From IMG/VR virus record IMGVR_UViG_3300044712_001937, positions 124,001 to 188,000 of that record: a stretch of 64,000 bases of DNA; one strand, written 5' to 3'. This document shows, in pieces, positions 1,369-62,858 of this stretch. The position numbers and the translations under genes are program-made. How positions within the stretch are numbered: position 1 is the first letter of the stretch; each line of letters opens with the position of its first letter. The notes under the pieces are model-generated. The model saw only the letters and a program-made list of their open reading frames with translations, searched no databases and had not been told where the DNA came from.

Positions 1369-1469
1369 ATTGTATATTAATTTGAATATATGCAAATAAA
1401 GCTATATTTGATATGTAACAAATTAATAATATCTTCGTACTTTATTTTATAATTAAAATATTAATATTT

Positions 1470-5073: not shown

Positions 5074-5156
5074 TTATTTTATTTTTACGTTTATTTGAAA
5101 TAAAGTAACAAATATTAATAATTTTCGTATTTTTGTTAAATTTAAAATTTATATAT

Positions 5157-23582: not shown

Positions 23583-23615
23583 TCTGCAACATTATAATAA
23601 AATCTTCGTATTATT

Positions 23616-24035: not shown

Positions 24036-24111
24036 GGCTCTATAGCTCAATTGGTCAGAGTGACAGTCTCTAAAACTGGAGGTTATGGGTTCGAACCCCA
24101 TTAGAGCCACA
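24036..24111 (+). tRNA. Amber suppressor tRNA (anticodon CTA)
   Basis: ggctcta/tagagcc; cagt-ct-cta-aa-actg; canonical D and T arms; A73. Confidence 0.9.
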
Positions 24112-35439: not shown

Positions 35440-35498
35440 ATTTATGCAACTATTAAGATTAGTTTTCGTAAATTTGTAAGAAAACTAATCTTAATATT

Positions 35499-40403: not shown

Positions 40404-40477
40404 TGTAGCGATGGCAGGACTCGAACCTACGACTTCCCCTTTCACAGAGGCGAGCTAACCAACTGCCCTACATCGCA
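40404..40477 (-). ncRNA. tRNA-like RNA with 6-nt anticodon loop
   Basis: D arm and GGTTCGAGTCC T-arm intact; cctct-gtgaaa-agggg. Confidence 0.7.
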
Positions 40478-40939: not shown

Positions 40940-41007
40940 GTAAAAAATAAAAGAACTTTAAATTAGTTTACAATATTACGATTAATTTTTTAAATTGTTA
41001 CTAAATT

Positions 41008-41433: not shown

Positions 41434-41511
41434 AATTCAAAATTTAATTGTTTACATAAATCAATACGAAATGAGTGTGAAATTGTTGCAAATTTTTAGT
41501 ATTTATTAAAA

Positions 41512-44500: not shown

Positions 44501-44574
44501 CGTTTACAGATAAATGGAATAGAGATGCAAGAAATTATGTTGTGTTTGATACAAGTTCAATAATTTATACCTAA
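41512..44574 (+). CDS. Polyvalent protein: zincin HExxH plus two ADP-ribosyltransferase-like domains
   Basis: LIHELQHAYDD...EIWAR; LFHGT...IFWT...AQTY; VFHGS..F..F....IGSGDG...GWGIYFSD...NYVVFD. Confidence 0.7.
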   Translation: MYFMNIFNIIKEEIQNVDETYQSVSEIKQLASDILMKTAEKNVENFNNKHVFDYLYGIHLSEIDTYKYTDLVDFIKNINIQIYYVPKENNGIYGNYSVYNIKSKKEFNPNASREINAFYDYQDLKNDIDSYIKQNNGIDDKILYIKIFYKFYNTLIHELQHAYDDYRSKTMAFNTKQNKSYRNKYDTAVNTNQNQNELQYDLEKNKAYLNLPHEIWARFTQAVTKTYFSTVDFKSDNTITNLMYPIDKVVDNFKRNFQGYHLLSDNMKKKLLNKVVQFWHYEQDKINKRNSDKNSNEINSDKPISEAAKNISDTEIIIDKGTELFHGTIEEFEKEKTTVGGYDNIFWTTLDSSIAQTYIPQSSNIYTNSSHYAMPSDDPMVVKTQLIMGINYDYSKAEFKNHRAISYFEAPIFQEYSDNYEKANNLAYQKYLEIENFIKEVKIKETNDTVTDEDYDKWGVLQDEYDYLLKQSRELNVSKFKNDFVNQKFMEMGYKPTGTEHAPDNNYSWKLKYDNGQVQPANYKAKGRLLIVIPQRDLKILDTTDRGNREGDLTDLDYHKHNWFQSAEQHGYDGIKINDFAQSSDQGNLGHTSIGLFKNTLKDVKIEEIDATHNDLEPHFQSSNWQSPEYKKYKGINEIIDEELEKIIHIYENPDIVKSEENNINIHYNDRNAYPFTTFKDFGNRVFIGKEGGTHTTIVYYYKDELPSDVMDRMRLHIEYDGRIFLNEKIISFWHYPDEDNFKEIIINLEKAFLNDRHMNVNIWNDPNYKIEVKNSDLSYNIIPIQQYIKSENPSELDYKQHIMSPLLKQKKSVPLGYGSKNPKNTPEYRNMRRIEFQSDESIKHLNKIISEMANILNEGIPVFHGSDRKFSTFDMSKIGSGDGKNLGGWGIYFSDSEDVSSRYVTSNGFLGEYELRNGNYFDLDSALEDGERIIRRLQQLGIDENQIEEFQNDYVEQAENYGNIDNKQAYDWLSYVLGGEKEASMFLKSMGYIGNTFTDKWNRDARNYVVFDTSSIIYT

Positions 44575-44624
44575 ATTTTGTAACAAATCAAATTATAACT
44601 CGTACATTTGCTTAAATTAATTAT

Positions 44625-45263
44625 ATGAATAATATATTAAAAATAATACGTGAAGTTTTTCAAGATTTTATTAAAGAAGCTGCTGGTGAAAAAAATGCTG
44701 AATATAAATACCAAAAATATGGTATCGAACCAGAATTTTCAAGTTTTGAAAAACAATATGGAGCACAACAACTAAGACAAAATAAAGACGAAATTATTTA
44801 TGAAGAAGGTAGATGGAAATTAATTAAAAATCCTACTACACTTCAAAATATTGGTGCAAGTGCTCGTGGAGTTATTGTTAGTAATGGTGATTTATATATT
44901 GAATCATATGGTGGCGAAAAAATTCATCACGATATATTAAGTATATTAGGACAAAAAGGAATTTTACCTACAGTTCCAAAAAAGAATTGGGTTAGTCAAT
45001 TACCCCAACAATCCGGATTCTTAACAGTTCAACGTTATAAAAATACTCCATATATCGCAATTGGTGAAAGTAATAAATTAATTTATAACGAACTCGATTA
45101 TAATCAACAAATAAAATATTATGATGAATTCCTAAATAAAGCTAAAGCTAAAAATCCTAATATCACCTTTGTTAATAAACTTGTTAATATAAAACTTCAA
45201 CCAAATATAGGTTCAAATGTTATGAATGAGGATACATTGAAATCATTAGAAAGGGTGATGTAA
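44625..45263 (+). CDS. Hypothetical protein
   Basis: ARGVI..NGDLY...IHHDIL. Confidence 0.7.
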   Translation: MNNILKIIREVFQDFIKEAAGEKNAEYKYQKYGIEPEFSSFEKQYGAQQLRQNKDEIIYEEGRWKLIKNPTTLQNIGASARGVIVSNGDLYIESYGGEKIHHDILSILGQKGILPTVPKKNWVSQLPQQSGFLTVQRYKNTPYIAIGESNKLIYNELDYNQQIKYYDEFLNKAKAKNPNITFVNKLVNIKLQPNIGSNVMNEDTLKSLERVM

Positions 45264-49451: not shown

Positions 49452-50069
49452 TTAACCAAGTATTAAGGTTTGACCATCAATTTTAAATTGCTCCAAATTT
49501 TCAACTATAAAAGTTCTAAATTTATCACTTCGTAAATCCAATTCTTTTTTGATTGTGTTTTTTGCGATAGTTTTTGCGGAGCTGTTAACGGTTTTATATT
49601 CTCCTTTAACCTTTACAGTTTTTCTTACACTTTGCCCGAAAATGTGTAAAGCTCCAGTCTCTTTATGTATGCGAAGGGCAGGGGTGACGTTTATATATGC
49701 GTCAGTCTGTGCAATGCTTTGAGCTGTGCGGTCTTCGAGCTTTTCAGATAAGTTTTTTATTGCACTGTTGACCATTTCAGATAATGCAACTTTGCAAACT
49801 TCAATATTAACCTTACATTTTTCGGAAATAGCTTTAAGGTCTGCATCTGTGCAGGATTGCAAACGTTTTAAATCGGTTTCTTTGGCATTTTTAACAGATA
49901 GGTTAATATTAATAACATAGTCGGAAATTTCACCTGTAGACTGTGAAATATAATTCGACAAGTTAATAAATGTAACGCCCTTAACATTAAAAAAGGCAGT
50001 AAAGAAAGTTTTTAAACTTGTAAGGTTAGCAACCTGTAAGTTAAATAAGAAAGATAATAAGTTTTTCAT
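49452..50069 (-). CDS. Hypothetical phage protein
   Basis: KGEYKTVNSSAKTIAK; preceded by TAAC-N16-CGTT on minus strand. Confidence 0.75.
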   Translation of the reverse strand: MKNLLSFLFNLQVANLTSLKTFFTAFFNVKGVTFINLSNYISQSTGEISDYVININLSVKNAKETDLKRLQSCTDADLKAISEKCKVNIEVCKVALSEMVNSAIKNLSEKLEDRTAQSIAQTDAYINVTPALRIHKETGALHIFGQSVRKTVKVKGEYKTVNSSAKTIAKNTIKKELDLRSDKFRTFIVENLEQFKIDGQTLILG

Positions 50070-50269
50070 GTTGTTAATATTTATTTGGTTTGTATCTATA
50101 TAAACGTAAAAAAACAATTTAGGTTATCTTTTTTATAAGTTTTTTAAATAAAACTTGTTTATTTAGAATGAATATTAATAGTAACTTTTTAATTAAAAAA
50201 TGTAACCTTTTTTTAAATTTGGGGTATACTTATACAAATAACACACTTTTTAATTTAAATCTTTACATT

Positions 50270-50938
50270 ATGAAAACTTCTGTTAAATACAACAAATCAA
50301 ACGTATTAAAAAATGCTTGGTCTATACTTCGCAAGTCTAACAACCTAAAGAGCTGGTCAGACTGCATGAAAGATGCATGGAATATAGAAAAGAATGGTTT
50401 TTCTGATATTTCAATCAGTACCATATATAATAAGTATTTTAAACAGATATTTAACTATGTTTTAAATAAGATACATAAATACGAAATTGCGCAGGAAATA
50501 ACTCAGGATATTTTTCTTAAAGTAAATGAACATATCAATAATTATGATGTTGACAGAGCAAGTTTAAAGACTTGGATTTATAAAATTGCAAACAATAAAG
50601 TTATTGATTATTGGAGAAGTTTAGAAAACAGAACCAAAGATTTAAAAACGCAAATATCAGATTTTCAGGATGAGAACGGCAAAGAATATTTTCAAATTGC
50701 TGATAATTCAGATATTGAAACCTATACCAATGGAATAGAGATAAATGAGGCTGTAAGTTTGGCATTATCAAACCTTAAACCTGAATATCGTAAAATTGCG
50801 GAATTATGTTTTATTGAGGGTTTAAAATATAACGAAATATCTGAAAAGTTGAATATCCCAATGGGTACGGTAAAAGGCAATATTAACCGTATTAGGGCAA
50901 TGTTACAAGAAAGTTTACAATCAGTATATCAAAATTAA
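50270..50938 (+). CDS. ECF-family RNA polymerase sigma factor with short N-terminal extra domain
   Basis: AQEITQDIFLK, KTWIYKIANNKVIDYWR (region 2); LKYNEISEKLNIPMGTVK..INR.R (region 4). Confidence 0.92.
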   Translation: MKTSVKYNKSNVLKNAWSILRKSNNLKSWSDCMKDAWNIEKNGFSDISISTIYNKYFKQIFNYVLNKIHKYEIAQEITQDIFLKVNEHINNYDVDRASLKTWIYKIANNKVIDYWRSLENRTKDLKTQISDFQDENGKEYFQIADNSDIETYTNGIEINEAVSLALSNLKPEYRKIAELCFIEGLKYNEISEKLNIPMGTVKGNINRIRAMLQESLQSVYQN

Positions 50939-51018
50939 AAACGTTTAAATTTGGGGTTTAAATACCCCAAATTTTAAATGTACAATGTATAAGTATAAAC
51001 CAAATAAACAATATAGCA

Positions 51019-51273
51019 ATGAAAACATTTAACCGTACAAGTTTACCGATGACAATTAAATATAATAAAAGGATATACACCCGTAACGATACCGAAAGCA
51101 GTTTATTAATGCAGGGTATTAGTTTAAATTCGTACATTAATTGTATGAAGTTAGCAGGTAGGAAAGTAATTTTGTGTAATGTACTAAGTAGAAACTTAAA
51201 AGGTAAAACAGATTTACATGGGCAACCTTATAAACCTACGCAATGGGTTTTTATACACAAACCTGTTAAATAG
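51019..51273 (+). CDS. Hypothetical protein
   Basis: ORF. Confidence 0.6.
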   Translation: MKTFNRTSLPMTIKYNKRIYTRNDTESSLLMQGISLNSYINCMKLAGRKVILCNVLSRNLKGKTDLHGQPYKPTQWVFIHKPVK

Positions 51274-51378
51274 AACCTATAAAATAAATCATATATTAAT
51301 TTATAATATATGGTTTATTTTGTAACAATTTTAATTAAAAAACGTATACTAATATACAAACCATAACAAACAAGACAA

Positions 51379-51645
51379 ATGAAAAATTCAGTAGTTGTAA
51401 ATTGCTCAAATGGTATAGTACGCCCATTACATGAAATAGCAAGTGAAATCCGTAAAGATTGGAAAAACGTTTATTTCGGTGCAGTTCCATACTTAGATGC
51501 AATGCGAAGTTTGGATAAGATAACCGATAACTACGGCATGGATAGTGCAAAGGATATTGTACTGTATTTTCTTTCCAATGCTTCAACTTGGAGAGGTGAC
51601 AATGCCAAACGTATTAAAGCAGAATTAAAGACAATGACAAAATAA
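51379..51645 (+). CDS. Conserved phage hypothetical protein
   Basis: RPLHEIASEIRKDW..VYFGAVPYLDAM...YFLSNA.TWRG..A..IKAEL. Confidence 0.8.
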   Translation: MKNSVVVNCSNGIVRPLHEIASEIRKDWKNVYFGAVPYLDAMRSLDKITDNYGMDSAKDIVLYFLSNASTWRGDNAKRIKAELKTMTK

Positions 51646-51814
51646 AGAAGTGTTTATTTAATGTAAAGTAAAAAGAGGTTGCAGGGATGCACCCTCTTTT
51701 TTTGTTTATACAATGTTCATATACATACATTTTTTAATTAAAAAGTTTAAATGTTTGTAACAATCTTAATTAAAAACCGTATACTAATGTACAAACCAAA
51801 TAAATATTAAGACA

Positions 51815-52375
51815 ATGACAAATTTAATTATCTCTATTACAAGCATTGAAGAAAAAAATTCAATTGAACAAGCTGGTTGTATTCTTTACAATGAAAAAAA
51901 AGGTACTTATTTACTACCTACCGATGCAATAGGTATTGATTTAAAAGGTTATTCAATTATTAATCGAAGTAGTTTATCTATTGAAGTTAAACAACCTGAA
52001 AAAAATAATGCCGAAAAGAGAAAAGAAAAGGAAATCAGAGTATATCAAAAACTTATTTCTCAGGGTTACACAAAGAAAGATTTAAGTAAATGGAATTTTT
52101 TTGATGTTAATCTGAAAGTTGTTTCTATTGAAGAAATTTCTTCAAATAAGATTGAGGAATGTTTAATTGCAACAAGCCACAAAGATTTAAAGAATGTTAT
52201 AATTAAACACATCTCAACCCGTAGCAACAGTAAAACCTTAAAATCTGCCTTAAAAATAGGTCAAACTGTTACCGCCAAAGTGTTAAGTTTAGAAGAACCA
52301 GAAACAAAGGTTGCAATAGGGATTAAACTATATAAACCTGAATATATTGCAAGTAAATACTTGCGGTTAAAATAA
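51815..52375 (+). CDS. Hypothetical protein
   Basis: ORF in promoter cassette. Confidence 0.7.
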   Translation: MTNLIISITSIEEKNSIEQAGCILYNEKKGTYLLPTDAIGIDLKGYSIINRSSLSIEVKQPEKNNAEKRKEKEIRVYQKLISQGYTKKDLSKWNFFDVNLKVVSIEEISSNKIEECLIATSHKDLKNVIIKHISTRSNSKTLKSALKIGQTVTAKVLSLEEPETKVAIGIKLYKPEYIASKYLRLK

Positions 52376-52490
52376 TAAAATTAGGTAAATTAAAACCCGT
52401 ATAGTAATGTACGGGTTTTTTTGTTTATATATGTAACAATCTTAATTAAAAACCGTAAACTAATGTACAAACCAAATAAATATTAAGACA

Positions 52491-52685
52491 ATGAGTAACG
52501 AAAACAAAACATATATAGGAACTTACAAAGTTGTGAAGTTCTTTAAGGTTTCAGGTAGAAGACAAATATTAAGACGTGGGTTAAGTTTGGAAGAGGCAAA
52601 GAGAGTAGTTAATACTTATCCAGATTCTAATCGTAGTCTGGTAGGTTTTACTAAACAATTCAGTGCCAATAAGTATTTTGTATAA
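52491..52685 (+). CDS. Small phage protein
   Basis: YKVVKFF...RGLSLEEAK. Confidence 0.7.
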   Translation: MSNENKTYIGTYKVVKFFKVSGRRQILRRGLSLEEAKRVVNTYPDSNRSLVGFTKQFSANKYFV

Positions 52686-52767
52686 TGTACTTTTTTAATT
52701 AAAAACCTGTAACATCTTACAGGTTTTTTCGTATATAGATATATATATAACCATAACAATTACGACA

Positions 52768-53211
52768 ATGATTGAAAAGATTAAGAACATATTGGACGAA
52801 GTTTTACCCGCTAATGCTTTTAGATATGTAGGTTTAAGTTCAGGTAGTTTTGGCGGTGACTATATTAAAATCGGTATTGCTGCAAGTGATTTAAATATTC
52901 ACCAAGTAGCAGGACAAAAACCGCAATTAGTTTCTTTAATGTTGCATTTGGACGATATGGAATTGCATCCCCAATGTTTTGGCGGTAATGGTGGGCAAAG
53001 CATATACAGAATGCCAAATTTGGAGCTAAGAGAAGAAAAGTATTTAGCCATGAAGAACGTAAAAATACCATTCAGGCAACCAAAGAGAGAAGAAAAATTT
53101 ATCTTAGCTACAATACGCAAATTTGCCGAAAATTGGCTGCAAGCATTAAAAGATAATAAAGAGGTTTTAATGTATCAAGACTTGGTAAACTACGATGCAA
53201 TATTAAGCTAA
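52768..53211 (+). CDS. Hypothetical protein
   Basis: ORF in promoter cassette. Confidence 0.7.
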   Translation: MIEKIKNILDEVLPANAFRYVGLSSGSFGGDYIKIGIAASDLNIHQVAGQKPQLVSLMLHLDDMELHPQCFGGNGGQSIYRMPNLELREEKYLAMKNVKIPFRQPKREEKFILATIRKFAENWLQALKDNKEVLMYQDLVNYDAILS

Positions 53212-53294
53212 GACTAACCAACAATTTTAATTAAAAACCGTGTAACATTTGCACGGTTTTTTCGTATATAGATATAACCAATAGTATTAAGACA

Positions 53295-53561
53295 ATGAGA
53301 ACAATTGACAAAATAATAACCAAAGTGAATGGTAGATATGGTGCTCCAATGGGCAGGTCTAATGTTATCCCAGAACCAAGTGAGACTATAAATGGGAAAC
53401 CACATTATAAAATTGTTGGTAAGGTTTTTGATTGTAAAGTACCAATGTGCAATGATGGTGCTTATGACAAAGGAGGTGCTTATTGGGGTATAGGTTCAAC
53501 TTTAAGAGTTAAGTATAATAAAGATTTAACATATATTGAGTTTTATAGAAGTGATTATTAA
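53295..53561 (+). CDS. Conserved phage hypothetical protein
   Basis: RYGAPMGR...GAYDKGGAYWG. Confidence 0.75.
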   Translation: MRTIDKIITKVNGRYGAPMGRSNVIPEPSETINGKPHYKIVGKVFDCKVPMCNDGAYDKGGAYWGIGSTLRVKYNKDLTYIEFYRSDY

Positions 53562-53578
53562 CCAATAACATTAAGACA

Positions 53579-54099
53579 ATGAAACCAATATTAATAAAGT
53601 ACAATATTTCTGAAAATAGAGCGCAAGAAATTGCGGACGAATTAAGTGAGATTAAAGATTTTTCAATTCTTTCATCTATAACAACCATTAAGGATAATGT
53701 ACAAAAACATTTGGGGTTAATAGCTAAGAATGAAATTGATTTTATTAATGAAGTTTGCGAAGTAGCATATAATTGCAAAGGTTTATACTTGTAACAAACT
53801 TTAATTAATAACTGTAACAATTGTACTAACTTTTCGTATACTAATGTACAAACCAAATAAATATTACGACAATGGCAGAGTATAAAGTAAGTCTGGAAAT
53901 TCAGCTCGATGCTAAAAATCCATTAGAAGCTGCAAAAACTTTTGAATCTTGGATTAAAGAAGTAGGTGAACATTTTCAATACCATGTACAAGAAGAAAAT
54001 ACTCCTGAAATCTTTTCAGTTGACTTGAATGAAGAAGATGAGGATGCAGTATTACCAGTAAAACCGGAGGATTATAATCCTATCATTTGTAAAATCTAA
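53579..54099 (+). CDS. Two small hypothetical genes (53579-53794, 53872-54099)
   Basis: ORFs with shared 5' UTR ending GACAATG. Confidence 0.65.
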
Positions 54100-54431
54100 T
54101 GTACAATTTTTAATTAAAAAAATGTAACATCTTTCAGGTTTTTTTCTATACTAATGTACAAACCAATAAATAATAACAATTTAAATTTAATGCCATGAGT
54201 AAAACATTTAAAGACGTTAAGAAGTATTATAACGGTAAAGAAAGTATTAACAATCGCAAACAGCAAAGAACTCTAAAACAAATGAGTCAATACGCTGGTA
54301 TTGGGATTGAAAGAGAGTAAAACAAATAAACAAAATTAAGGGAGATTATCTCCCTTTTTTTTATTTAAAATAGGTAACAATTTTAATTAAAAAACGTATA
54401 CCTATATACAAACCAAATAAATATTACGACA

Positions 54432-54719
54432 ATGGAAGCAATTGATAATTATGTAAAGGAAATACAAGAAGCACAAATTAAAGATTGGAATAGGCATGGT
54501 TTTACATTACCTCATCCAATTATATCAATGACTAAAGGTCAAAAGTTTTATAAAATATACATCACTACATTTGGAAGTAAAGCAATTCATTGCTTTGTCG
54601 ATTTTGATGGTAATATCTTTAAAGCTGCCAGTTTAAATGCACCAGCTAAAGGTATAAGAGGGAATATCAATAATGAGAAGAAACCTTTATTATGTGGTGA
54701 TTTTTATAGATACAGGTAA
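54432..54719 (+). CDS. Conserved phage hypothetical protein
   Basis: HCFVD..GNIFKAAS.NAPAKGIRGNI. Confidence 0.75.
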   Translation: MEAIDNYVKEIQEAQIKDWNRHGFTLPHPIISMTKGQKFYKIYITTFGSKAIHCFVDFDGNIFKAASLNAPAKGIRGNINNEKKPLLCGDFYRYR

Positions 54720-54768
54720 CAATTTTAATTAAAATACGTATATCAATATACAATCAATAATTAAGACA

Positions 54769-54984
54769 ATGAATGAAGTAAGAGCAAAAATAGTGGTGAT
54801 GTCGCATTTATCCGATGCAGGTTTTGAAGTAAATGTAAATCCAATACAGGCACAAAAACGAATTGAATTTGCAAAGTTTATTATCTTAAAAGTAAAAGGA
54901 GATTTAAACCTAATGATTGACCCAACTAAATTATGGGATGAGTTTATGGGTATATCAATACTAAAGTCAGGAAAGGGAGAATAA
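54769..54984 (+). CDS. Hypothetical protein
   Basis: VMSHLSDA motif. Confidence 0.65.
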   Translation: MNEVRAKIVVMSHLSDAGFEVNVNPIQAQKRIEFAKFIILKVKGDLNLMIDPTKLWDEFMGISILKSGKGE

Positions 54985-55042
54985 TTCTCCCTTTTTTAAT
55001 TAAAAAATGTAACAATAATAAAACATTTACGTATAATATAGT

Positions 55043-55082
55043 AGGCAGGGTGAAACTTGGGTGCGGTAATCCGACCCTGCCT
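55043..55082 (+). ncRNA. Small hairpin RNA, copy 1
   Basis: aggcagggt-gaaacttgggtgcggtaatccg-accctgcct directly after ECF promoter. Confidence 0.55.
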
Positions 55083-55211
55083 TTATGTTTGCTTATTTAG
55101 ATTTAGTTTAAATAAAGTTTGTGATAATTTTAATTAAAAAAGTTTATATTTGTATAACAATTTTAATTAAAAAACGTATTACTATATATAAACCAAATAA
55201 AATAAAATATT

Positions 55212-56108
55212 ATGGCAAGGATTAAAAAAGTTAAAATCGGAACAGAAGCACTCACATTAAGTGAATTACTGTTTAAGGTTGAAATGAGGGATAATCCACG
55301 TAGAACAAACAGCGAATATTCAAAAGTCGTTGTAGGTACTATTTTTCAGGATGATTTTAGAGGTGAATTAGAAGTTGATTTAAACTACTGTTCACCACGT
55401 TATGAACTTGTTCCTAACAGTGAAATATTTCCAGAAATCAAACGTGTATTAAACGAAAATGAGGTTGAATATACAGTAACATATTCGCACCTTAATTTTG
55501 CCCGTTTTTACGTTGACTACGTAATAACTGACGCTCGATATGCTTACAGGATTAAAAGCAGTAAAGGCGATATTATTCAACCTATGCTTAGAGTTCAGCA
55601 CTCTTACAATGGTTTAACTAAGTATAAAATCACTTTCGGATATTTCCGTTTGGTTTGTACCAATGGCTTATCTATTCCAGTTCAAGAAATGAACGAATTC
55701 AATTTATGTATCGTTGGTAAACATACTGATTCGATTAAACACTCATTCAAAAAATTGGATGTTATGTTGAAGTTGTTTGTTAACGATGCAAAGCAAATTA
55801 CTGAAAGTATTACAGCTAAATATGAATTACTTGGCGGTCGCATGATTACTAATGTAGAAGACCGTATAACTGAGGTTTTAGAAGCCTCTGGTATCATTGC
55901 AGTTGAAACCAAAGGGTTTAACAGCGTTGAGGATATTAAAACCCGTATAAATAAAGAAACATATTTGTACAATGGGCAAGTAAATGAATGGCTCATTTAT
56001 AATGGAATTAACTCATATATTAATGATGATTCCAGAAATATTGCAGCACCAGAGAAAAGGCAGGAAACTGATAGCAAGGTACTTGAATACATGCTCACTA
56101 CATGTTAA
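55212..56108 (+). CDS. DUF932-family protein
   Basis: YELVPN...HSYNG....ITFG.FRLVCTNGL. Confidence 0.8.
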   Translation: MARIKKVKIGTEALTLSELLFKVEMRDNPRRTNSEYSKVVVGTIFQDDFRGELEVDLNYCSPRYELVPNSEIFPEIKRVLNENEVEYTVTYSHLNFARFYVDYVITDARYAYRIKSSKGDIIQPMLRVQHSYNGLTKYKITFGYFRLVCTNGLSIPVQEMNEFNLCIVGKHTDSIKHSFKKLDVMLKLFVNDAKQITESITAKYELLGGRMITNVEDRITEVLEASGIIAVETKGFNSVEDIKTRINKETYLYNGQVNEWLIYNGINSYINDDSRNIAAPEKRQETDSKVLEYMLTTC

Positions 56109-56397
56109 ATAAAAGGGGTTAATCCCCATTTATTTTTAATATTAATTTGTATATTTGTACAAATTTCAAATTTCTATAAAGAGTGTGCTATCAGTTTAAC
56201 CAGAACTGGCACACTTTTTTTATTTAAAATAGTTTGTACAATCTATAACATTTTTAATTAAAAACCGTAAACTAATGTACTAAATTTACATTCGTCACTT
56301 AAAAAACCTGTTATGTCAAAAATGTAACAGGTTTTTTATTTTTACTTGCATTTGATTGTACATAATGTATTTTTGCTGTACTTATGTATAACCTAAA

Positions 56398-58567
56398 ATG
56401 AAGTACACAAATTATTTAATGAAATGTGACTATGTTAATTGTGAGAAAATTATTAACGATAGTCCTGAATATATGAAACCTATTACTGTTCCAATGTCCA
56501 TTATCGGTGCTGTTGGCGGTTTATGTATCATTGGTGGAATGTTCCCAATGACTTATATTATTGATACATTTCGCAATGTACGCTATCAATATTTAAGATA
56601 TTATAGAAAATCTCACCCATTTAAACAAATTAATTTGAATTGATTTTAATTAAAAACTGTAACATTAACAGTTTTATTTCGTATTATATTGTACAACCAA
56701 ATAAATAATACAACAATGAGAGCAGATATTTTAATCGAAAAATTTGAAAGACAAACAGCAGATTTATTAAATAAACAAACTGTTGAGATATTCAAAGAAC
56801 TGGTTTTATTATTTGGAGAAATGAAACAAGTTCAACCAAATTTAAAACGTTTATATATTGGTATGGGAACATACGCAATTGATGGTGATTATATTGTCGA
56901 ATATAATGATTTCGAAGACGAAAGTAATACCGATGAGATTATTGGTAAAATTGATGAAGAACTTGTAAGATACAAAGGTTTAGCCAAAAATAGCGATTTT
57001 TCTGAACAAATTAATGATTGTATTAATAATGATAATAATGCTATTTTTAACGCTTCAAACCATATGAATGAGGCATGTATTGAATTCGTTAAACTTTGTA
57101 ATTATATTCAAGAAATTAAAATGACTACATTATTTTCTGGTGTTAACGAAAATGGTGTGATTGTTGATTATGGTGCTGGTTCGCATTTAGATACTTATAT
57201 TGATGCTGTTGAAAGTTCAGAGGTTGAACTACTTGTTAAGAATAAAATTCCAATAATATTTCATCAAACACATTCAGAAGAGTATTATAAATATACTCAC
57301 CTAAAAGACTGATTTTAATTAAAAACCTTGCAACAATTGTGAGGTTTTTTCGTATATAAATGTACAACCAATAATTAAGACAATGACAAAGAAAGCATTT
57401 ATCGAATTAGCAAGCTATCACCAATACGGTAAACGTAATGAACGTGGTTTTATAGCTTTGTTCTTTGATTGGATGAGAGGTGATGATGGCGTTGGTTATA
57501 AATATTGTGTTTATGCCAGAGCTTTAAACTCAACAAAGAAAGAACTTATTGATGCATTATATAATGCAATTACCAAAGATGAGGATACTCCTTGGTATGT
57601 TCAAACAATTATTGCACAGGAAAATAAACAAAGATTTAAAGTTCCTATTGTTGCGAGTGGTTTATTTAATCTAATTAAACATAACTAATAGATTTAAACC
57701 TGCTTAGGCAGGTTTTTCTTTTTATAAAAAGAATGATATTTCTTATGTAATATTTTTATACGTTAGTCAACAATAAAAAACATTTATTAATTTCTTATGT
57801 ATATTTGTGGTATGTATATTAAACCTCATTAGTCTCATGGATAAATTATATGTTATAAATAAGAAACATTTAGATGATTTTAAAGGTTATACCGGAGAAT
57901 TAGTTATCATTGTTCATATACATAGTTTAGGGCATTGTACTATTGAAAGTACTTTAACAGGTCGATTATGGTATGCTGATATTGAGAATGATTTAGTTGA
58001 GGCTATTGAAGCTCAAAATAAAGAAGAAATATTTGAAGAAGTTTTGCAACAATTATTTTAATATATCGTATTATAATGTACAAAGATGTTAAACTAATAC
58101 ATATATAAAATGTGTAAAAATAATAAAGTTCAGCACAGATGGGAATCAATGAAAACTGAAAACCCAGCATTGTACAAGTTACTCAAAAGTAAAGTAAATA
58201 AGAAATAAGGTTGTCTATATTGTTATTTGGTTGTAGTCCTCCTGCTTGTCACAGGAGGATTTTTTTGTTTATATCTGTAACATTTTTAATTAAAATTCGT
58301 ATTACTATATACAAACCAATAATAAAGACAATGATTATTAAACCTGAAATTAAATATAAAGAATTTACTGTTTATCCTGATAACTATTTTGGATATTCCC
58401 TTTATGATAGAAATGGTAAATGGTGTCAATCTGCTACTAATATTGAATCATTAAAAGGTTCAGTAGAATGCATACTTTTAGCTGATATTGAATTAACACC
58501 TAATGAATATTGGAAAAGAAAAAATGCAATATTGAAAAAATATAACTTAATTTCTTGTAACAATTAA
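56398..58567 (+). CDS. Several hypothetical genes (56398-56643, 56716-57312, 57383-57688, 57837-58061, 58330-58567)
   Basis: ORFs, most behind ECF-type promoters. Confidence 0.6.
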
Positions 58568-58762
58568 AAACAAATTTCGTATATTTACATATCAGAAGCG
58601 ATTAAGAATCTGCTTCAAAACAAAGTAACTGGATTATAAACTTAAAATGCCAGAATTATGAAAAATGCCGTAAATTTAGCAGCTCCCACGAGGGGTACTC
58701 CCAAGTAGAAAAACTATATAATAATAATTAAATTCCGAATAAATAATAATTAGAAAGAAAAT

Positions 58763-59054
58763 AACTGTTCAGGATAAACCAAAAATAACTAAAAGATATG
58801 AAATCCTTGCAAGGTTAGTCTTTTTGGTTTTGACTACACAATCCGCACGCTTGGCTGTCTATATATTAAATGACTGCCTGTGCACCATATGAATGCCCGC
58901 CTTACGCTTATCCCTCCCGCATCCCTAACGGCTTGCAGGTGGCAACAGCGAGGCTGCAAAACTTGTCCGGATACATACACGGTGCGATAATATACCGCAA
59001 ACGATGGAGTAATCATTCCGGATGCCCGTAAATCAGTCAAATTCCTGAACAGTT
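58763..59054 (+). ncRNA. About 290-nt GC-rich structured RNA candidate
   Basis: 12-bp closing stem aactgttcagga/tcctgaacagtt with nested stems; promoter at 58556; terminator 59057-59091. Confidence 0.65.
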
Positions 59055-59156
59055 TTAGTCCCCTGACCATCGTGTGTGAGGGGATTTTTTTGTTTATATC
59101 TGTAACATTTTTAATTAAAATTCGTATACTAATATACAACCAATAAAAATAAGACA

Positions 59157-59960
59157 ATGAAAGAATTTAAATCAATCGCTAATGCAAAGAAATTAACTAA
59201 ACTTACTTATTTAGGTGATGTTAATAAAAGCGCAAAATTAGCTAAAAATGGTAAAATTTCACACCAAATGACTTATGGAATTTACCTTGCTCCTGCAAAT
59301 GTTTCAGGTTATAATACCTGTCCTTTCTCTACTCCTGAATGCCGTAAAGGTTGTTTAGCCACATCCGGTCGTGCTGGTATGGAAATAATGGCAGGTAAAA
59401 CCAAAATTGAAAATTGTAGAACTACAAAAACAAAATTATTTTACGAAAATAATGAGTTTTTTATGCAATGGTTAATTGCTGAAATGCTAAACCATAAAAC
59501 CAATGCTGAAAAAAATGGTTACGGTTTTTCTGCCCGTTTAAATTGCACCAGTGATATTGACTGGCAAAATACCTATTATAATGGTAAAAATATCTTTGAG
59601 ATATTTCCTGACGTTCAATTCTACGATTATACAAAGAACCCTAACAAGTTCAATAATAAGCCTTTAAACTATCATTTAACTTTCTCATATACAGGTAAAA
59701 ACTGGGTTAAATGTAAAGAGTTACTTGAAGTTGGTTATAATATCTCAATGATATTCAACGTAAAAGACGAAAACTTATTTCCAAAAACATTTGGCGGTTA
59801 TGAAGTTGTTAACGGTGACAAAACAGATTATAGGGTTAACGATGGCAATGGTAAGATAATTGGTTTGAAATTTAAACGTATTGCTGACCAATTGGCACAA
59901 AAAGAAGTTATCAATAGTTGTTTTGTAGTTCAACCAGATAACGAACTTTGCCAGTTTTAA
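59157..59960 (+). CDS. GP88-family protein
   Basis: LAPA..SGYNTCP..TPEC..GCL..SGR; RLNCTSDI; FYDYTK; YHLTFS; GD.TD.R. Confidence 0.8.
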   Translation: MKEFKSIANAKKLTKLTYLGDVNKSAKLAKNGKISHQMTYGIYLAPANVSGYNTCPFSTPECRKGCLATSGRAGMEIMAGKTKIENCRTTKTKLFYENNEFFMQWLIAEMLNHKTNAEKNGYGFSARLNCTSDIDWQNTYYNGKNIFEIFPDVQFYDYTKNPNKFNNKPLNYHLTFSYTGKNWVKCKELLEVGYNISMIFNVKDENLFPKTFGGYEVVNGDKTDYRVNDGNGKIIGLKFKRIADQLAQKEVINSCFVVQPDNELCQF

Positions 59961-60080
59961 CCATAATAAAGCACACTATTAAATTGGTGTGCTTTATTAT
60001 TTGCGGTGAATAAATAAACTATTAGCCTTAAATTTTGCGGTGAATATTAATGTACAAGTTTTAATTAAAAACATACTATT

Positions 60081-61891
60081 ATGGATAAGTTTTATATTGA
60101 TAGACAATTTGGTCAACCAATTTTTATAGATGTTGAAATGGGTATAGTTCAAAACTGTTATAATGAAAGTGAAAACTTTAATAATAAAATGAATGAACAT
60201 TATAAAGGCAAAGAAATATCTTTTCTTAAAACCGATTTCGAGAATAGAATGAAAGGTACTTACCATAATGTACGTTCATTATCCGTTTGTACTGCCCTTA
60301 ATAAAATTGATGCTGTTAAGTCTAAGATACAAAACATTAATAATCTCATTGGTAGCTTAGACTCTAAAAATAGTAGAATTCCTGAGCTTAAAGAAACAAT
60401 TAAAGAGTATGAGATTGAGCAATCTAAGTTTGAAAAGGAATTGATTTCGGAGCGTCAAAGAATGATATCTGAACATAAATATAACTTTCCAGTATAACAA
60501 TTTTAATTAAAAATGTTTAACCTAATCTAAATAATTATGAGCAAAGTTAAAGAATTTTCCAGAAATGAACTTGTCCAAACCATTCTCGATAACACTAAGA
60601 AAGAGTTAACAGGTGTTAAGACTATTGAAACTGTTGACAATAGTACCAAGGATAGTATTGAAACTATTCTTGAAAGCACAAAAGAGTTCTTAGATACTCT
60701 TTCGTATGATGAGCTTACAGTAATGGTAGAGGCTATATAAAACACATAATGTGTTAAGTATCATTTATGCTTGTGTGTAATTGATTTTGTTAGAGAAAAT
60801 AAAAATTCCTGAATTATAGTTATTCAGGAATTTTTTTATATTTATATATATACAATTATAACAATCTACAATGAGAATAGAGCAATTAGATAATGCTGCA
60901 TTGGAAAATGCACGTAGGAGTTTTATTGATAATATTAATCAAATTATCGGTGAAAACAATAATGACTATGTACGAATGTGGTTAGAAAAATTGTCATTGT
61001 ATGAACTAAAACAATTGTACGAAGACTTTCAAAGAATCAATTCCAATAAGAATAATCATTGTACGTGTTTTTAATTAAAACTATTGTACATATATTTCCC
61101 GGTTTGTTTTGTAACATTTAATTCTATTGTACGTATACCATTGTACAACCAATAAAAAAAATAAACAAATGAAAAAATCAATTCTTAATGTAATTAATAA
61201 ATGTTATAGTATATATCAAGAATCTGGTTATGGTGCAGCTATTGACCATATCGAAGCTATGAGAGCTGATAAGAAACCAGTTTATACTGATATCGTTTAT
61301 GAGCATTGTACGGAGTGTGATAACGATATGCCAAGCTTAAACCATATCTGTTTAATCTGTGGACAAGGTACAAGCATACCTATTAGTAATGTACATGTTC
61401 CAGAGTTCATTCAAAATATGGATTGGAAATTACTCAGAGAACAAAAAGAAACTATACTCACTATTGTTAAATGGAATAAAATTCCATTGTTAAACGAAAA
61501 TTTGGAAGGTATTATCTCATTATTGGATAGTGTTCAGGATTATGCTGTTGATGTCGCTGGCTATTCCGAAACAGATGTATTTCTGTTTGATAGGGATGAC
61601 CAGAAAGAAGAAAACGCTAAGAAAGAAGTAAAGAGATTATTGGGCGATATTCCTGATGGTGAATATACTGCCAATTTTAACGCTAATAAATGTACAGAAG
61701 GTTTAAAAATCATCGGTTATCAAATAATAAATGATGATACAAATGATTTACATCCAGATATGGAAGGAAGCTTCTGTATATATTCAAAGGAGCAATGCGA
61801 AGAAATTTTAAACCATGAACCTAATAAATCTTTTAGACTTCTTCCAATACATGAAGGAGATATAGAAGAACCTACATTCATGAACATATAA
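60081..61891 (+). CDS. Hypothetical genes (60081-60497, 60537-60740, 60871-61074, 61169-61891)
   Basis: ORFs; Zn-ribbon CTECD..CLICG in the last. Confidence 0.6.
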
Positions 61892-61961
61892 TTTAAAATT
61901 TAATATTTTTATTGTATTTATATAAAATAATTATTATTTTTACTTAATTAAATTTTATAAT

Positions 61962-62153
61962 ATGAAAAAAGTTCTCATTATTTCAGCATTAATTGCATGT
62001 ATGAGTTTTAGTTTTTCTCAAACTAATGCTCAATGTATTGTAACAAAAGTTGATGGTGTAAACCCAACTTCCTTGTATCCAGAACCGCCTCCAGATATTC
62101 CGCCTGAAGGCGGACCTGGCCCTGATACTGGCGGTCCTGGAAATCCAAAATAA
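61962..62153 (+). CDS. Small secreted peptide with Pro/Gly-rich tail
   Basis: Signal peptide MKKVLIISALIACMSFS; PEPPPDIPPEGGPGP. Confidence 0.6.
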   Translation: MKKVLIISALIACMSFSFSQTNAQCIVTKVDGVNPTSLYPEPPPDIPPEGGPGPDTGGPGNPK

Positions 62154-62266
62154 GGAGTTTAAAACTCCGGAATGTTCTATGAATGTTCCGGAGTTTTTAT
62201 TTAAACTGATTAGTAATGATATTTATTAAATTCTTTTTTTAAGTATGTATATAAAATACTGGAATT

Positions 62267-62611
62267 ATGTTAACACAAGAAGTATTAGACAATCACATTC
62301 TTTATTTAAAAAAGAATAAATATAGAAACAAAATCCAAGAACTTAAACTTGAGCATTGTACAGATAATAAAGGCGACTATATCTATCTTGTTCAAATCAT
62401 TATAAAAAAATCATTACGCAATACCGGATATGGCTCTCTGGTATTGTCCGAAGTTATTAAAATAGCTAATGAACATAATGTACGCATTAAATTATGGGTT
62501 AGTGGTATACTCGGTGGTGATGTTAAAAGATTATACGAATTCTATGGCAAACATGGATTCTTTTTAATTAAAAAAGATAATGATGGATATATGATTTATA
62601 ATCCACATTGA
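62267..62611 (+). CDS. GNAT-family acetyltransferase
   Basis: LRNTGYGS motif A; FYGKHGF. Confidence 0.8.
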   Translation: MLTQEVLDNHILYLKKNKYRNKIQELKLEHCTDNKGDYIYLVQIIIKKSLRNTGYGSLVLSEVIKIANEHNVRIKLWVSGILGGDVKRLYEFYGKHGFFLIKKDNDGYMIYNPH

Positions 62612-62643
62612 AACATTTTTATTTAAAATCCGTATACATAATT

Positions 62644-62682
62644 GTCAGGGTTATACTTGGGTGAAGTAATCCAACCCTGCCT
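62644..62682 (+). ncRNA. Small hairpin RNA, copy 2
   Basis: cagggt-tatacttgggtgaagtaatcca-accctg after TGAAAC-N16-CGTA. Confidence 0.5.
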
Positions 62683-62858
62683 TATATTTTAACTTTAGAA
62701 TAATTCTAAATTAGGTAGGTAGACTACTGATAATACAATCTATTTAATGAAACCATTGTACATATTTTAATTAATACCATTGTACGGTTATATTTTTTGG
62801 TTTATCTGTAACAATTTATTCTTACTCTCGTATCATACACTAACCAATAAATATTATT

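What the first reader, a model, noticed from the sequence alone, without database searches (positions are those of the whole stretch)
50200..62835. Phage-encoded ECF sigma factor together with its readable regulon (TGTAAC-N16-CGTA)
Seen: an ECF sigma gene (50270-50938) and roughly 30 promoter-like sites in the window with a 16-nt spacer between (T)GTAAC/GCAAC/GAAAC and CGTA. They are dense in 51-63 kb and also occur at 1414, 5104, 23585, 35445, 44579, and on the minus strand near 41000, 41490 and 50125. A GGTA variant sits upstream of the sigma gene itself. Known: the consensus resembles B. subtilis SigW/SigX promoters (TGAAAC/TGTAAC-N16-CGwA/C). Inference: a temporal transcription class run by a phage ECF sigma, probably autoregulated.
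Basis: partly seen in the sequence, partly recalled or inferred. Interest (0 to 1): 0.7.

Follow-up and report, generated by a model that had tools for sequence, protein, structure and literature searches.

The report
Jumbo-phage ECF sigma promoter regulon
A 365-kb uncultured jumbo phage, probably of a Bacteroidota host, carries about 64 copies of a strict ECF-type promoter (G[T/C/A]AAC-N16-CGTA) in front of its non-structural genes and encodes ECF sigma factors that most likely read them; this is a clean new example of a known phage strategy, but which of its two ECF sigmas reads the motif is not settled.

Summary
The exact pattern GTAAC-N16-CGTA occurs 19 times in the window against 0.11 expected. 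The phage genome (364,702 bp) holds 64 G[TCA]AAC-N16-CGTA sites against 4 in a reversed control. The spacer is fixed at 16, nearly all sites are intergenic and co-oriented with the next gene, and 47 of 64 lie 20-42 nt before an ATG. Window 50270-50938 encodes a true ECF sigma (sigma1).

The motif is one of three promoter classes:
- H: a host Bacteroidota sigmaA type, TTG-N20-TAnnTTTG.
- E: this motif. It drives a helicase, NAMPT, rIIA/rIIB, DUF932, GP88, many small ORFs, a tRNA and a candidate ncRNA.
- L: GTATTTATA with no -35. It drives portal, terminase and a tail-spike-like structural protein.

At least 14 related IMG/VR phage records keep motif E. In each of the eight relatives examined, the sigma1 ortholog sits at the head of the densest array.

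Autoregulation is plausible: sigma1's own promoter is an E variant in seven of nine lineages. This is a new member of a known kind.

The parts
50270..50938 (+). sigma1: a 222-aa ECF (group 4) sigma factor. It has an N-terminal helical hairpin of about 45 aa, then the sigma2 and sigma4 domains.
   Evidence: Pfam r2, r4_2 and ECF. TIGR02937 at 94.5 bits against a cut-off of 42.9. Best solved relative is B. subtilis SigW, 5wuq, E=3.4e-16. AF2 model with mean pLDDT 75; the Foldseek top hits are all ECF sigmas. Orthologs at 40-86% identity head the motif array in eight related contigs or genomes.
50202..50226 (+). sigma1's own promoter: an E variant, GTAAC-N16-GGTA, 44 nt before the ATG. It is the putative autoregulatory or cascade entry point.
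   Evidence: Sequence read. The same layout in relatives: AGTA in L003, G004 and G001; CGTA in L007; CGTT in G007; spacer 17 in G003; not recognisable in L004 and G005. It is the only such non-C variant in a promoter-like position; the scan counts this site as coding in the crude gene call and finds no other in promoter position.
50161..50182 (+). A conserved 22-nt box (ATTTAGAATGAATAT-T-AATAG) about 27 nt upstream of the sigma1 promoter. Its function is unknown; it is a candidate control site for sigma1 expression.
   Evidence: Exact 14-mer found. The box is present upstream of sigma1 in L003, G001 and G007 (exact core) and L007 (diverged). The only second exact copy in the genome lies inverted at genome position 188673(-), the far end of the 14.5-kb array.
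50101..50130 (-). A divergent degenerate E site (ATAAC-N16-CGTT) facing the minus-strand gene 49452-50117.
   Evidence: Read. The counterpart in L003 is a full GTAAC-N16-CGTA site (position 3220 minus). In the window it is not statistically supported on its own.
51322..62832 (+). Dense array of 20 E promoters. First base of each -35: 51322, 51757, 52433, 52709, 53242, 53814, 54374, 54716, 55009, 55154, 56245, 56659, 57330, 58046, 58277, 58557, 59102, 61111, 62610, 62808. Most precede a small gene with a conserved A-rich leader (…ACAAACCAATAAA…ACA-ATG). Products include DUF7717, DUF932, GP88 and a GNAT.
   Evidence: sites and distances; Pfam. The syntenic arrays in L003, L004 and L007 carry the same motif.
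52698..52733 (+). Example of a composite terminator-promoter cassette. An A-tract/hairpin/T-tract terminator whose 5' arm and loop contain the -35 GTAAC. Its T-tract forms the 3' half of the spacer before CGTA. Other examples are at 53231-53266 and 57319-57354.
   Evidence: RNA folds of -12.3, -14.3 and -11.8 kcal/mol, z-scores -5.7, -4.4 and -4.1. The same design occurs in L003, L007, G004, G008 and G009.
1415..1439 (+). E promoter before an SF2 helicase (1470-3506).
5105..5129 (+). E promoter before the NAMPT-family gene (5157-6623). Its -10 reads CG-TAttTTTG, overlapping a host-type TAnnTTTG box.
23586..23610 (+). E promoter (GCAAC variant) about 425 nt upstream of the tRNA with anticodon CTA (24036-24110).
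35446..35470 (+). E promoter (GCAAC) before the 340-aa gene at 35499-36521. It also carries CG-TAaaTTTG.
40977..41001 (-). E promoter on the minus strand. tRNA-His (40405-40477, minus) lies about 500 nt downstream.
41465..41489 (-). E promoter (GCAAC) before the DUF2227 gene (41008-41433, minus).
44580..44604 (+). E promoter before the 212-aa gene at 44625-45263.
58581..59095 (+). A stretch of about 510 nt with no convincing ORF, between a top-scoring E promoter (58557) and a terminator (about 59062-59095). Candidate structured ncRNA of the regulon.
   Evidence: sequence. Fold z-score -3.98. Blocks near-identical in L003, with a compensatory change in the first hairpin. No Rfam match at E<=1.

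Best explanation
The window is part of a complete 364.7-kb jumbo myophage distantly related to T4, probably with a Bacteroidota host. It encodes no detected RNA polymerase of its own and seems to reprogramme the host core enzyme with its own sigma factors.

Shown by the sequence: there are three promoter classes.
- H: the host sigmaA type, TTG-N20-TAnnTTTG. It precedes replication and repair genes, including the primase-sigma2 operon.
- E: G[T/C/A]AAC-N16-CGTA(tA), about 64 sites. It precedes non-structural genes and is densest in a 14.5-kb array of small genes right after the sigma1 gene. Many array sites are fused to the previous gene's terminator hairpin.
- L: GTATTTATAnnAAA with no -35 element. 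It precedes virion and packaging genes.

Inferred mechanism. Host sigmaA transcribes class H at the start of infection. A phage ECF sigma, most likely sigma1 (window 50270-50938), then binds host core RNA polymerase. Its sigma4 domain reads GTAAC at -35 and its sigma2 domain reads CGTA at -10. This switches on class E as a delayed-early or middle class. Sigma1 reinforces its own synthesis through a weaker E-like promoter (GTAAC-N16-GGTA). The region-2-only gp55-like sigma (genome 279582-279923) reads the single-box class L late in infection.

Open point. What first fires the sigma1 promoter is unknown. Sigma2, which is made from a host-type promoter, is the obvious candidate.
For: The motif is real and behaves like a promoter.

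It is of ECF type. An AAC -35 with a CGTA -10 is the sigmaW-type signature (PMC5758882). It is the only two-box motif in the genome.

It is conserved. At least 14 related IMG/VR records have 6-60 exact hits each, against 0-6 in the reversed controls. An E site lies 30-50 nt before the rIIA start in 5 of 6 genomes, although the rest of that intergenic DNA does not align.

Evidence linking E to sigma1:
- Its ortholog directly heads the densest E array in each of the eight relatives where this was examined.
- Its own gene carries an E-like promoter in seven of nine lineages, and the full consensus in L007. This autoregulatory-promoter rule is the standard way to infer ECF specificity. Autoregulatory -10 elements are known to differ from those of the wider regulon (PMC5758882).
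- It is the closer of the two phage sigmas to SigW over both DNA-reading domains. Sigma1 scores 62.8 bits (E=3e-16) with an almost identical 'LNIPxGTVK' region 4. Sigma2 scores 35 bits with a poorly aligned region 4.
- Sigma2's region 4 is only borderline in Pfam: 24 bits, which is 0.1-1.7 bits below the two gathering cut-offs.

Class assignments:
- E drives a helicase, NAMPT, DUF2227, DUF932, GP88 and rIIA/rIIB.
- L drives portal, TerL and a tail-spike-like protein.
- H drives the primase-sigma2 operon, with TTG-N20-TATATTTG, and an Mre11-like nuclease.
- The minimal sigma is supported.

Precedent: the sigma gp47 of phage 7-11 reads a bipartite GTAAtg-N16-aCTA promoter (PMC8948821).
Against: - No transcription start site or expression data exist. 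No RNA run was listed.
- Sigma2 is also an ECF-type sigma with both domains, and it is expressed from a host-type promoter. It could therefore be the early factor that turns E on.
- Sigma2's -10-reading loop (SFDITKKFKPW) resembles SigW's (SFDINRKFSTW) more than sigma1's does.
- All six near-complete relatives keep both sigmas, so there is no natural knock-out.
- The sigma1 promoter lacks the invariant C of CGTA in most lineages. It may therefore be read by a different factor.
- If sigma1 reads E, sigma2 is left without a visible regulon.
- The gene calls behind the distance statistics are crude and home-made.
- The Bacteroidota host is inferred, not shown.
Confidence: 0.55

Rival explanations
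1. Sigma2 is the reader of class E. Sigma2 is the ECF-type sigma encoded next to the primase, at L002:1159-1773 on the minus strand. Host sigmaA makes sigma2 early. Sigma2 then turns on all E promoters, including the weak one in front of sigma1. Sigma1 has another, still invisible role: a few promoters, a later shift in specificity, or overlapping recognition of the same sites together with sigma2.
For: - Sigma2 lies in an operon with a canonical host-type promoter, TTG-N20-TATATTTG. This gives a self-starting cascade.
- Its sigma2 domain matches the SigE/SigW chimera best (5or5, E=2.4e-9), and its loop is SigW-like.
- It is as widely conserved as the motif (41 loci).
- E is the only two-box motif available for two two-domain sigmas.
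- Overlapping promoter recognition among paralogous ECF sigmas is well known (PMC5758882).
Against: - Region 4 of sigma2 is divergent. It scores just below the Pfam cut-offs and aligns poorly with SigW. The -35 GTAAC, in contrast, is canonical.
- Sigma2 is never adjacent to E arrays and has no E-like promoter of its own.
- The model leaves sigma1, which always sits at the head of the array, without a function.
Confidence: 0.25
2. A host ECF sigma reads class E, for instance an envelope-stress sigma activated by infection. The phage sigmas serve other purposes or merely supplement it.
For: - The motif is a generic ECF01/sigmaW-like consensus (PMC5758882).
- Bacteroidota encode many ECF sigmas (general knowledge).
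- The array looks like an early, T4 PeSL-type region, which would be expressed before any phage sigma exists (PMC4122927).
- Six or seven E sites overlap a host-type TAnnTTTG box.
Against: - The motif is invariant across phages from many different samples whose sigma1 proteins are only 40-48% identical, and it always travels with the phage sigma genes.
- Host ECF sigmas are normally held inactive by anti-sigma factors.
- No close cellular homolog of sigma1 was found. The best non-phage-like hits are at most 40% identical.
Confidence: 0.12
3. The repeats are not mainly promoters. They would be recombination or shuffling cassettes, or binding sites for a phage DNA-binding protein, that happen to look like ECF promoters.
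For: - In the array the cassettes share long identical stretches: the TTTTAATTAAAA palindrome (33 copies, 23 of them in 170-190 kb) and a common leader. This resembles the homogenised PeSL cassettes that mediate gene shuffling (PMC2839356, PMC4122927).
- The spacer sequences are lineage-specific.
Against: - The 43 dispersed sites share only the two boxes and the exact 16-nt spacing. Nothing else is conserved.
- Orientation and distance to start codons are those of promoters.
- The two boxes are exactly where ECF sigmas make their contacts.
- A shuffling role would add to promoter function, not replace it.
Confidence: 0.04

Closest known systems
B. subtilis sigmaW (ECF01) and its regulon, TGAAAC-N16-CGTA
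   Same: Two-domain ECF sigma. The -35 contains AAC, the spacer is 16 nt and the -10 is CGTA (PMC5758882). SigW is the best solved relative of sigma1. T-rich spacers are frequent.
   Different: Sigma1 scores 73-81 bits against equivalog cut-offs of 209-243, so it is not a SigW ortholog. It is phage-encoded. No anti-sigma partner was found. It has an extra N-terminal hairpin. The preferred -35 is GTAAC rather than GAAAC.
Sigma factors of phiEco32-like phages (phiEco32 gp36; phage 7-11 gp47, which reads GTAAtg-N16-aCTA)
   Same: A phage-encoded ECF-like sigma that binds host core RNA polymerase and reads a bipartite phage promoter with a 16-nt spacer (PMC8948821). A Foldseek hit to a 'gp79-dependent RNAP promoter open complex' entry (9m7y_F) has E=7e-3; gp79 is phiEco32's activator of gp36 holoenzyme (PMC8948821).
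   Different: Those phages are small podophages with about 8 late promoters. Here about 64 promoters drive non-late genes in a 365-kb myophage that has two further sigma-like proteins.
Sigma cascades of Bacillus phage SPO1 (gp28, then gp33/34) and phage T4 (gp55/gp33 late transcription)
   Same: Temporal classes are set by successive phage sigma-like factors on the host core enzyme. A region-2-only sigma probably reads a single-box late promoter, as T4 gp55 reads TATAAATA (established knowledge). Gene content is T4-like: rIIA/B, PolB, Rad50/Mre11 and gp17-like TerL.
   Different: T4 uses MotA/AsiA, not a sigma, for its middle class. Here an ECF-type sigma fills that tier, and the late box is GTATTTATA.
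PeSL composite terminator/early-promoter cassettes of T4-like phages
   Same: Short terminator-plus-promoter units flank small, variable ORFs in a hyperplastic region of a T4-like genome (PMC2839356, PMC4122927).
   Different: Here the promoter is of ECF type, not the host primary-sigma type. The -35 box also lies inside the terminator hairpin rather than beside it.
Group 2 jumbo phages (Iyer et al. 2021)
   Same: No RNA polymerase of their own. They encode a minimal sigma and a fuller sigma, and have T4-like replication and capsid modules. The group includes Bacteroidetes phages (PMC7824862).
   Different: That work catalogues the genes only. No cognate promoter regulon was described for this lineage, and no cultured close relative was found.

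Membership tests
ECF (group 4) sigma-70 family: sigma1 | Sigma2 domain (region 2) present | tested here: met
   PF04542 at 1.6e-13, residues 87-152 of the longer ORF.
ECF (group 4) sigma-70 family: sigma1 | Sigma4 domain (region 4.2 helix-turn-helix) present | tested here: met
   PF08281 at 6.7e-11. Region 4 aligns with SigW and with the E. coli sigmaE region 4/-35 DNA structure 2h27 (TM by target 0.80).
ECF (group 4) sigma-70 family: sigma1 | Regions 1.1 and 3 absent; small size | tested here: met
   222 aa. The AF2 model shows only a helical hairpin, sigma2, a disordered linker (residues 141-155) and sigma4. TIGR02937 is above its cut-off.
ECF (group 4) sigma-70 family: sigma1 | Cognate promoter with an AAC -35 and a CGT-type -10, usually also upstream of its own gene | tested here: inconclusive
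   Such a motif is abundant. A variant precedes the gene in seven of nine lineages. Binding by this particular protein is not shown, and a second ECF sigma exists.
ECF (group 4) sigma-70 family: sigma1 | Co-encoded anti-sigma factor | tested here: not met
   The small ORF after sigma1 (51019-51273) has no Pfam match. It is not conserved beyond the closest relative. This feature is typical of the family but not obligatory.
SigW equivalog (TIGR02948 / NF007223) | Score above the curated equivalog cut-off | tested here: not met
   72.7 bits against 243.1, and 81.3 bits against 209. Sigma1 works like SigW but is not a member.
T4 gp55-type late sigma: the 113-aa protein at genome 279582-279923 | Sigma region 2 only; homology to the gp55 family | tested here: inconclusive
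   phrog_234 'late sigma transcription factor' at 7.5e-6 for the G003 ortholog and 2e-3 for the genome's own copy. The two are 42% identical. Structure look-alikes are viral sigma-like factors, TM 0.78-0.85. There is no PDB sequence hit.
PeSL terminator/promoter cassettes | Stem-loop terminator fused to a promoter, flanking small variable ORFs | tested here: met
   Array gene content differs between relatives.
PeSL terminator/promoter cassettes | The promoter is of the host primary-sigma (early) type | tested here: not met
   The boxes are GTAAC/CGTA, not the TTG/TAnnTTTG seen at class H sites of the same genome.
Bacteroidota sigmaA promoters (class H) | TAnnTTTG -7 box with TTG about 20 nt upstream and a leader of about 20-40 nt | tested here: met
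   63 boxes lie within 60 nt of start codons, about 2.5 times the genome rate. The distance peaks at 25-30 nt, and TTG recurs at -24 to -21 relative to the box. The consensus is from PMC6847099.

The most novel reading that the evidence does not exclude
A two-step ECF relay discriminated by one base. Host sigmaA makes sigma2. Sigma2 fires only the sigma1 promoter, G[TA]AAC-N16-[A/G]GTA, beside the conserved 22-nt box. Sigma1 then runs the 64-site CGTA regulon. The core of that regulon is an array resembling an early anti-defence or 'leading region' (DUF932, DUF2958, GP88, GNAT, ncRNAs). The array is built from terminator-embedded promoter cassettes that also act as shuffling points. An alternative reading of similar novelty: the array is truly immediate-early, because sigma1 is delivered with the virion or because a host ECF sigma is hijacked.
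Probability: 0.2. Interest if true: 0.65.

Novelty: new member of a known kind. Interest (0 to 1): 0.5.

Why it matters
The motif gives a ready-made, sequence-readable transcription map (host-type, ECF-type and late classes) for a whole family of uncultured jumbo phages of 300-365 kb. The map predicts which of their hundreds of unknown genes act before virion assembly.

The very strict promoter (fixed 16-nt spacer, near-invariant boxes) and its compact sigma could serve as an orthogonal expression part for Bacteroidota, where genetic tools are scarce.

Three sigma-like proteins face only one two-box motif. That poses a clear, testable question about the division of labour between paralogous phage ECF sigmas.

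Tried and rejected
- RNA evidence. The first two attempts at an RNA-run search failed because the service was busy. The third listed no RNA run. Only DNA runs from rhizosphere metagenomes hold the sequence.
- Complex prediction with sigma1, sigma2 and promoter DNA was not folded by the tool. It is not evidence either way.
- Natural knock-outs. I looked for a relative with the motif but only one of the two ECF sigmas. All six near-complete genomes have both. The fragments with one sigma are incomplete.
- A crAss-like phage (G002) whose single sigma is 31% identical to sigma1 has no E sites and no detectable two-box motif. This was uninformative.
- A fourth promoter class for sigma2: the dyad scan and a k-mer scan of 74 unlabelled intergenic regions found none.
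- Subclasses within E, array against dispersed: the core boxes are identical.
- Non-C -10 variants (GGTA, AGTA, TGTA) are not enriched. No other intergenic example was found in promoter position.
- An anti-sigma factor next to sigma1: none recognisable.
- A host-type promoter for sigma1: a TAAATTTG box lies at 50214-50221, but there is no TTG at the right distance and the box is not conserved.
- TAG recoding, suggested by the CTA-anticodon tRNA: not supported.
- A megablast search of the phage collection with the region found nothing.

Full report
WHAT THE WINDOW IS

The window is bases 124,001-188,000 of a single 364,702-bp IMG/VR virus record. The record has direct terminal repeats and is rated complete. 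GC content is 26%. It comes from rhizosphere metagenomes.

Its content is that of a distant T4-like jumbo phage:
- a gp17-type large terminase and a portal;
- a baseplate wedge protein and a tail-spike-like protein;
- rIIA and rIIB;
- family-B DNA polymerase, Rad50-like and Mre11-like proteins and a primase;
- more than 20 tRNAs in the window alone.

No RNA polymerase subunit was encountered. This fits the 'group 2' jumbo phages, which lack their own polymerase and carry sigma factors (PMC7824862). The nearest cultured terminase is from a Flavobacterium myophage at 27% identity, followed by T4-like cyanophages.

Start codons lack Shine-Dalgarno sequences and sit in A-rich leaders with A at -3. 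The genome also contains good TTG-N20-TAnnTTTG promoters. Both features are hallmarks of Bacteroidota (PMC6847099). A Bacteroidota host is therefore inferred, not shown.

- The exact pattern GTAAC-N16-CGTA occurs 19 times in the window against 0.11 expected, and 45 times in the genome.
- An iterated weight matrix separates 63 sites at 14 bits or more from a background of 2.
- Allowing T, C or A at the second -35 position gives 64 sites against 4 in the reversed control.
- The constraints are unusually tight. The spacer is 16 nt, with counts of 0/0/45/3/0 for spacers 14 to 18. The -35 is GTAAC (45), GCAAC (11) or GAAAC (8), never GGAAC. The -10 is CGTA. GGTA, AGTA, TGTA, CGTC and CGTT are not enriched.
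- All but one or two sites are intergenic and point at the next gene. In 47 of 64 the A of CGTA lies 20-42 nt before an ATG.
- Most of the remainder precede a tRNA, a small ORF that my crude gene call missed, or non-coding stretches.

THE SIGMA GENE

Window 50270-50938 encodes a 222-aa protein with Sigma70_r2, Sigma70_r4_2 and ECF profiles. It passes the ECF superfamily model TIGR02937. It falls far below every equivalog cut-off, including SigW, SigM and SigX. Its best solved relative is B. subtilis SigW.

An AlphaFold model (mean pLDDT 75) shows an N-terminal helical hairpin, a sigma2 domain, a disordered linker and a sigma4 domain. The best Foldseek matches are all ECF sigmas. The hairpin of about 45 aa is conserved among the closer orthologs. 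It is absent from more distant ones.

THREE PROMOTER CLASSES

K-mer and dyad enrichment in upstream regions show that motif E is the only two-box motif in the genome. Two other signals exist.

- Class L is aGTATTTATAnnAAA with no conserved -35. It lies 20-30 nt before about 86 start codons. These include the portal, the large terminase and a tail-spike-like structural protein. This is the late class.
- Class H is (c)TTG, about 20 nt, then TAnnTTTG, which is the Bacteroidota primary-sigma promoter (PMC6847099). It stands before an Mre11-like nuclease and other genes. As TTG-N20-TATATTTG it stands five bases before the start codon of the primase gene.

Class E drives:
- an SF2 helicase, a NAMPT-family enzyme and DUF2227;
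- DUF932 and GP88;
- DUF7717, with a GNAT gene also in the array;
- rIIA and rIIB;
- at least one tRNA;
- dozens of small ORFs.

None of the annotated E-driven genes is structural. Class E is therefore a pre-late class.

ARCHITECTURE OF THE ARRAY

In window 51.3-62.8 kb, 20 E promoters follow one another. Most precede a small gene with a shared A-rich leader.

In a subset, the -35 box lies inside an A-tract/hairpin/T-tract terminator, and the T-tract forms the end of the spacer. Examples are at 52698-52733, 53231-53266 and 57319-57354. Their fold energies are -12 to -14 kcal/mol, with z-scores of -4 to -6.

In others, the palindrome TTTTAATTAAAA fills the spacer or lies just upstream. The genome has 33 copies, 23 of them in 170-190 kb.

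These composite units resemble the PeSL terminator/early-promoter cassettes of T4-like phages (PMC2839356, PMC4122927), except that the promoter is of ECF type. The spacer fillers differ between lineages while the two boxes do not. This fits concerted evolution of cassettes, or a lineage-specific operator. I could not tell which.

CONSERVATION

Sigma1 homologs at 40-86% identity occur on metagenomic contigs with the same gene order: sigma, then small genes, DUF2958, DUF932 and GP88. The same motif occurs there, including the terminator-embedded form.

Searching IMG/VR for the array-type promoter, and for relatives of sigma1 and sigma2, recovered a family of jumbo phages of 200-357 kb. Their exact-motif counts are 6-60 per record, against 0-6 in the reversed controls.

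In every relative where it could be examined, the sigma1 ortholog directly precedes the densest array, in the same orientation.

An E site lies 30-50 nt before the rIIA start in five of six genomes. The rest of that intergenic DNA is unalignable. This is a phylogenetic footprint that argues for function.

The genome has a second ECF-type sigma, sigma2 (204 aa, 22% identical to sigma1). Its gene overlaps the end of the primase gene inside the replication module.

It also has a 113-aa, region-2-only sigma-like protein related to the T4 gp55 family. A sigma with only region 2 fits the single-box class L. That leaves one two-box motif for two two-domain sigmas.

Every near-complete relative has both sigmas, so comparative genomics offers no natural knock-out.

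WEIGHING SIGMA1 AGAINST SIGMA2

For sigma1:
- the invariant position at the head of the array;
- an E-like promoter in front of its own gene in seven of nine lineages: GGTA in the window; AGTA in L003, G004 and G001; the full CGTA consensus in L007; CGTT in G007; spacer 17 in G003; not recognisable in L004 and G005;
- stronger similarity to SigW across both DNA-reading domains;
- a canonical region 4, against the borderline one of sigma2.

The own-promoter argument is the standard way to infer ECF specificity. Autoregulatory promoters are also known to differ from the wider regulon in the -10 element (PMC5758882).

For sigma2:
- it is made from a host-type promoter, so it can start the cascade, whereas sigma1 has no recognisable host-type promoter;
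- its -10-reading loop is more SigW-like;
- otherwise it has no visible regulon.

I put sigma1 at about 0.55. Sigma2, alone or overlapping with sigma1, is at about 0.25. A host ECF sigma is at about 0.12, and non-promoter explanations at about 0.04.

An attractive synthesis, not testable here, is a relay: host sigmaA makes sigma2, sigma2 fires the sigma1 promoter, and sigma1 runs class E. A conserved 22-nt box upstream of the sigma1 promoter could be part of that switch. Its only other exact copy lies inverted at the far end of the array.

COMPARISON WITH WHAT IS KNOWN

Phage-encoded sigmas that redirect host polymerase to a temporal class are classical. Examples are SPO1 gp28 and gp33/34, T4 gp55, phiEco32 gp36 and phage 7-11 gp47. 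The last reads GTAAtg-N16-aCTA (PMC8948821). Sigma genes in group 2 jumbo phages have been catalogued (PMC7824862).

This case is new in four respects:
- the lineage is uncultured, with no close relative in the phage collection;
- the regulon is large and strict;
- it is used for the pre-late tier alongside a gp55-like late sigma;
- the -35 box is embedded in terminators.

I therefore class it as a new member of a known kind.

LIMITS

- There are no expression data.
- Gene calls are home-made.
- The host is inferred.
- The complex-prediction job was not run by the tool.

Noticed in passing
G000 313189-313803 (-) = L002:1159-1773 (-), outside the window: A second ECF-type sigma (204 aa, 22% identical to sigma1). 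Its gene overlaps the 3' end of a primase-like gene. The operon has a canonical TTG-N20-TATATTTG promoter only 5 nt before the primase ATG, so the mRNA would be nearly leaderless. The protein is conserved in 41 IMG/VR loci.
   Followed up: yes
G000 279582-279923 (-) = L062:1480-1821 (-), outside the window: A 113-aa sigma-like protein with region 2 only, related to the T4 gp55 'late sigma' family. It is the probable reader of the late motif.
   Followed up: partly
genome-wide; in the window, for example upstream of 6699, 27600(-) and 41512: A single-box motif, aGTATTTATAnnAAA, lies 20-30 nt before about 86 start codons, including portal and terminase. It is the probable late promoter class.
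   Followed up: partly
window 58581-59095 (+): A relatively GC-rich stretch of about 510 nt without a convincing ORF, between a top-scoring E promoter and a terminator. Fold z-score is -3.98. Blocks are near-identical in relative L003, with a compensatory change in the first hairpin. There is no Rfam match. It may be an undescribed structured phage RNA.
   Followed up: partly
window 55034-55085 (+); L003 near 3190 (-): A short hairpin RNA candidate (GGCAGGGT…ACCCTGCC) lies directly after the E promoter at 55009. A similar sequence follows an E promoter at a different place in L003.
   Followed up: no
window 50161-50182 (+) and G000 188673 (-) = L015 about 652-673: The two exact copies of the core of the box ATTTAGAATGAATAT(T/A)AATAG lie in inverted orientation at the two ends of the 14.5-kb sigma1 array. 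The box is conserved upstream of sigma1 in distant relatives.
   Followed up: partly
window 50-64 kb (G000 170-190 kb): The palindrome TTTTAATTAAAA occurs 33 times in the genome, 23 of them in 170-190 kb, mostly in or just upstream of array promoters. Relatives carry different, lineage-specific spacer fillers. It is either an operator for an unknown regulator or the result of cassette homogenisation.
   Followed up: partly
window 24036-24110 (+): A tRNA with anticodon CTA, which would read TAG (ARAGORN labels it Pyl). TAG ends only 24 of 480 called genes. Reading TAG as sense adds just 2% to the long open frames, so genome-wide recoding is not supported.
   Followed up: partly
window 13439-20405 (+): A dense cluster of about 20 tRNA genes. 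Several are unusually long (84-92 nt; Ser, Cys, Asn, Ile).
   Followed up: no
window 41512-44574 (+): A 1020-aa protein with a C-terminal ART-PolyVal ADP-ribosyltransferase domain, preceded by the late motif. It looks like a 'polyvalent' protein of the kind some phages inject with their DNA.
   Followed up: no
window 5105-5129, 35446-35470, 44580-44604 and three or four sites elsewhere in the genome: Six or seven E promoters read CG-TAnnTTTG, so the ECF -10 overlaps a host-type -7 box. About 0.4 would be expected by chance. They may be dual-specificity promoters.
   Followed up: partly
window 55212-56108, 59157-59960, 62267-62611; L003, L004, L007: The array carries DUF932, GP88 and GNAT genes, and DUF2958 in relatives. 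These families are common in the leading regions of conjugative elements, which suggests an anti-defence or host-takeover island.
   Followed up: no
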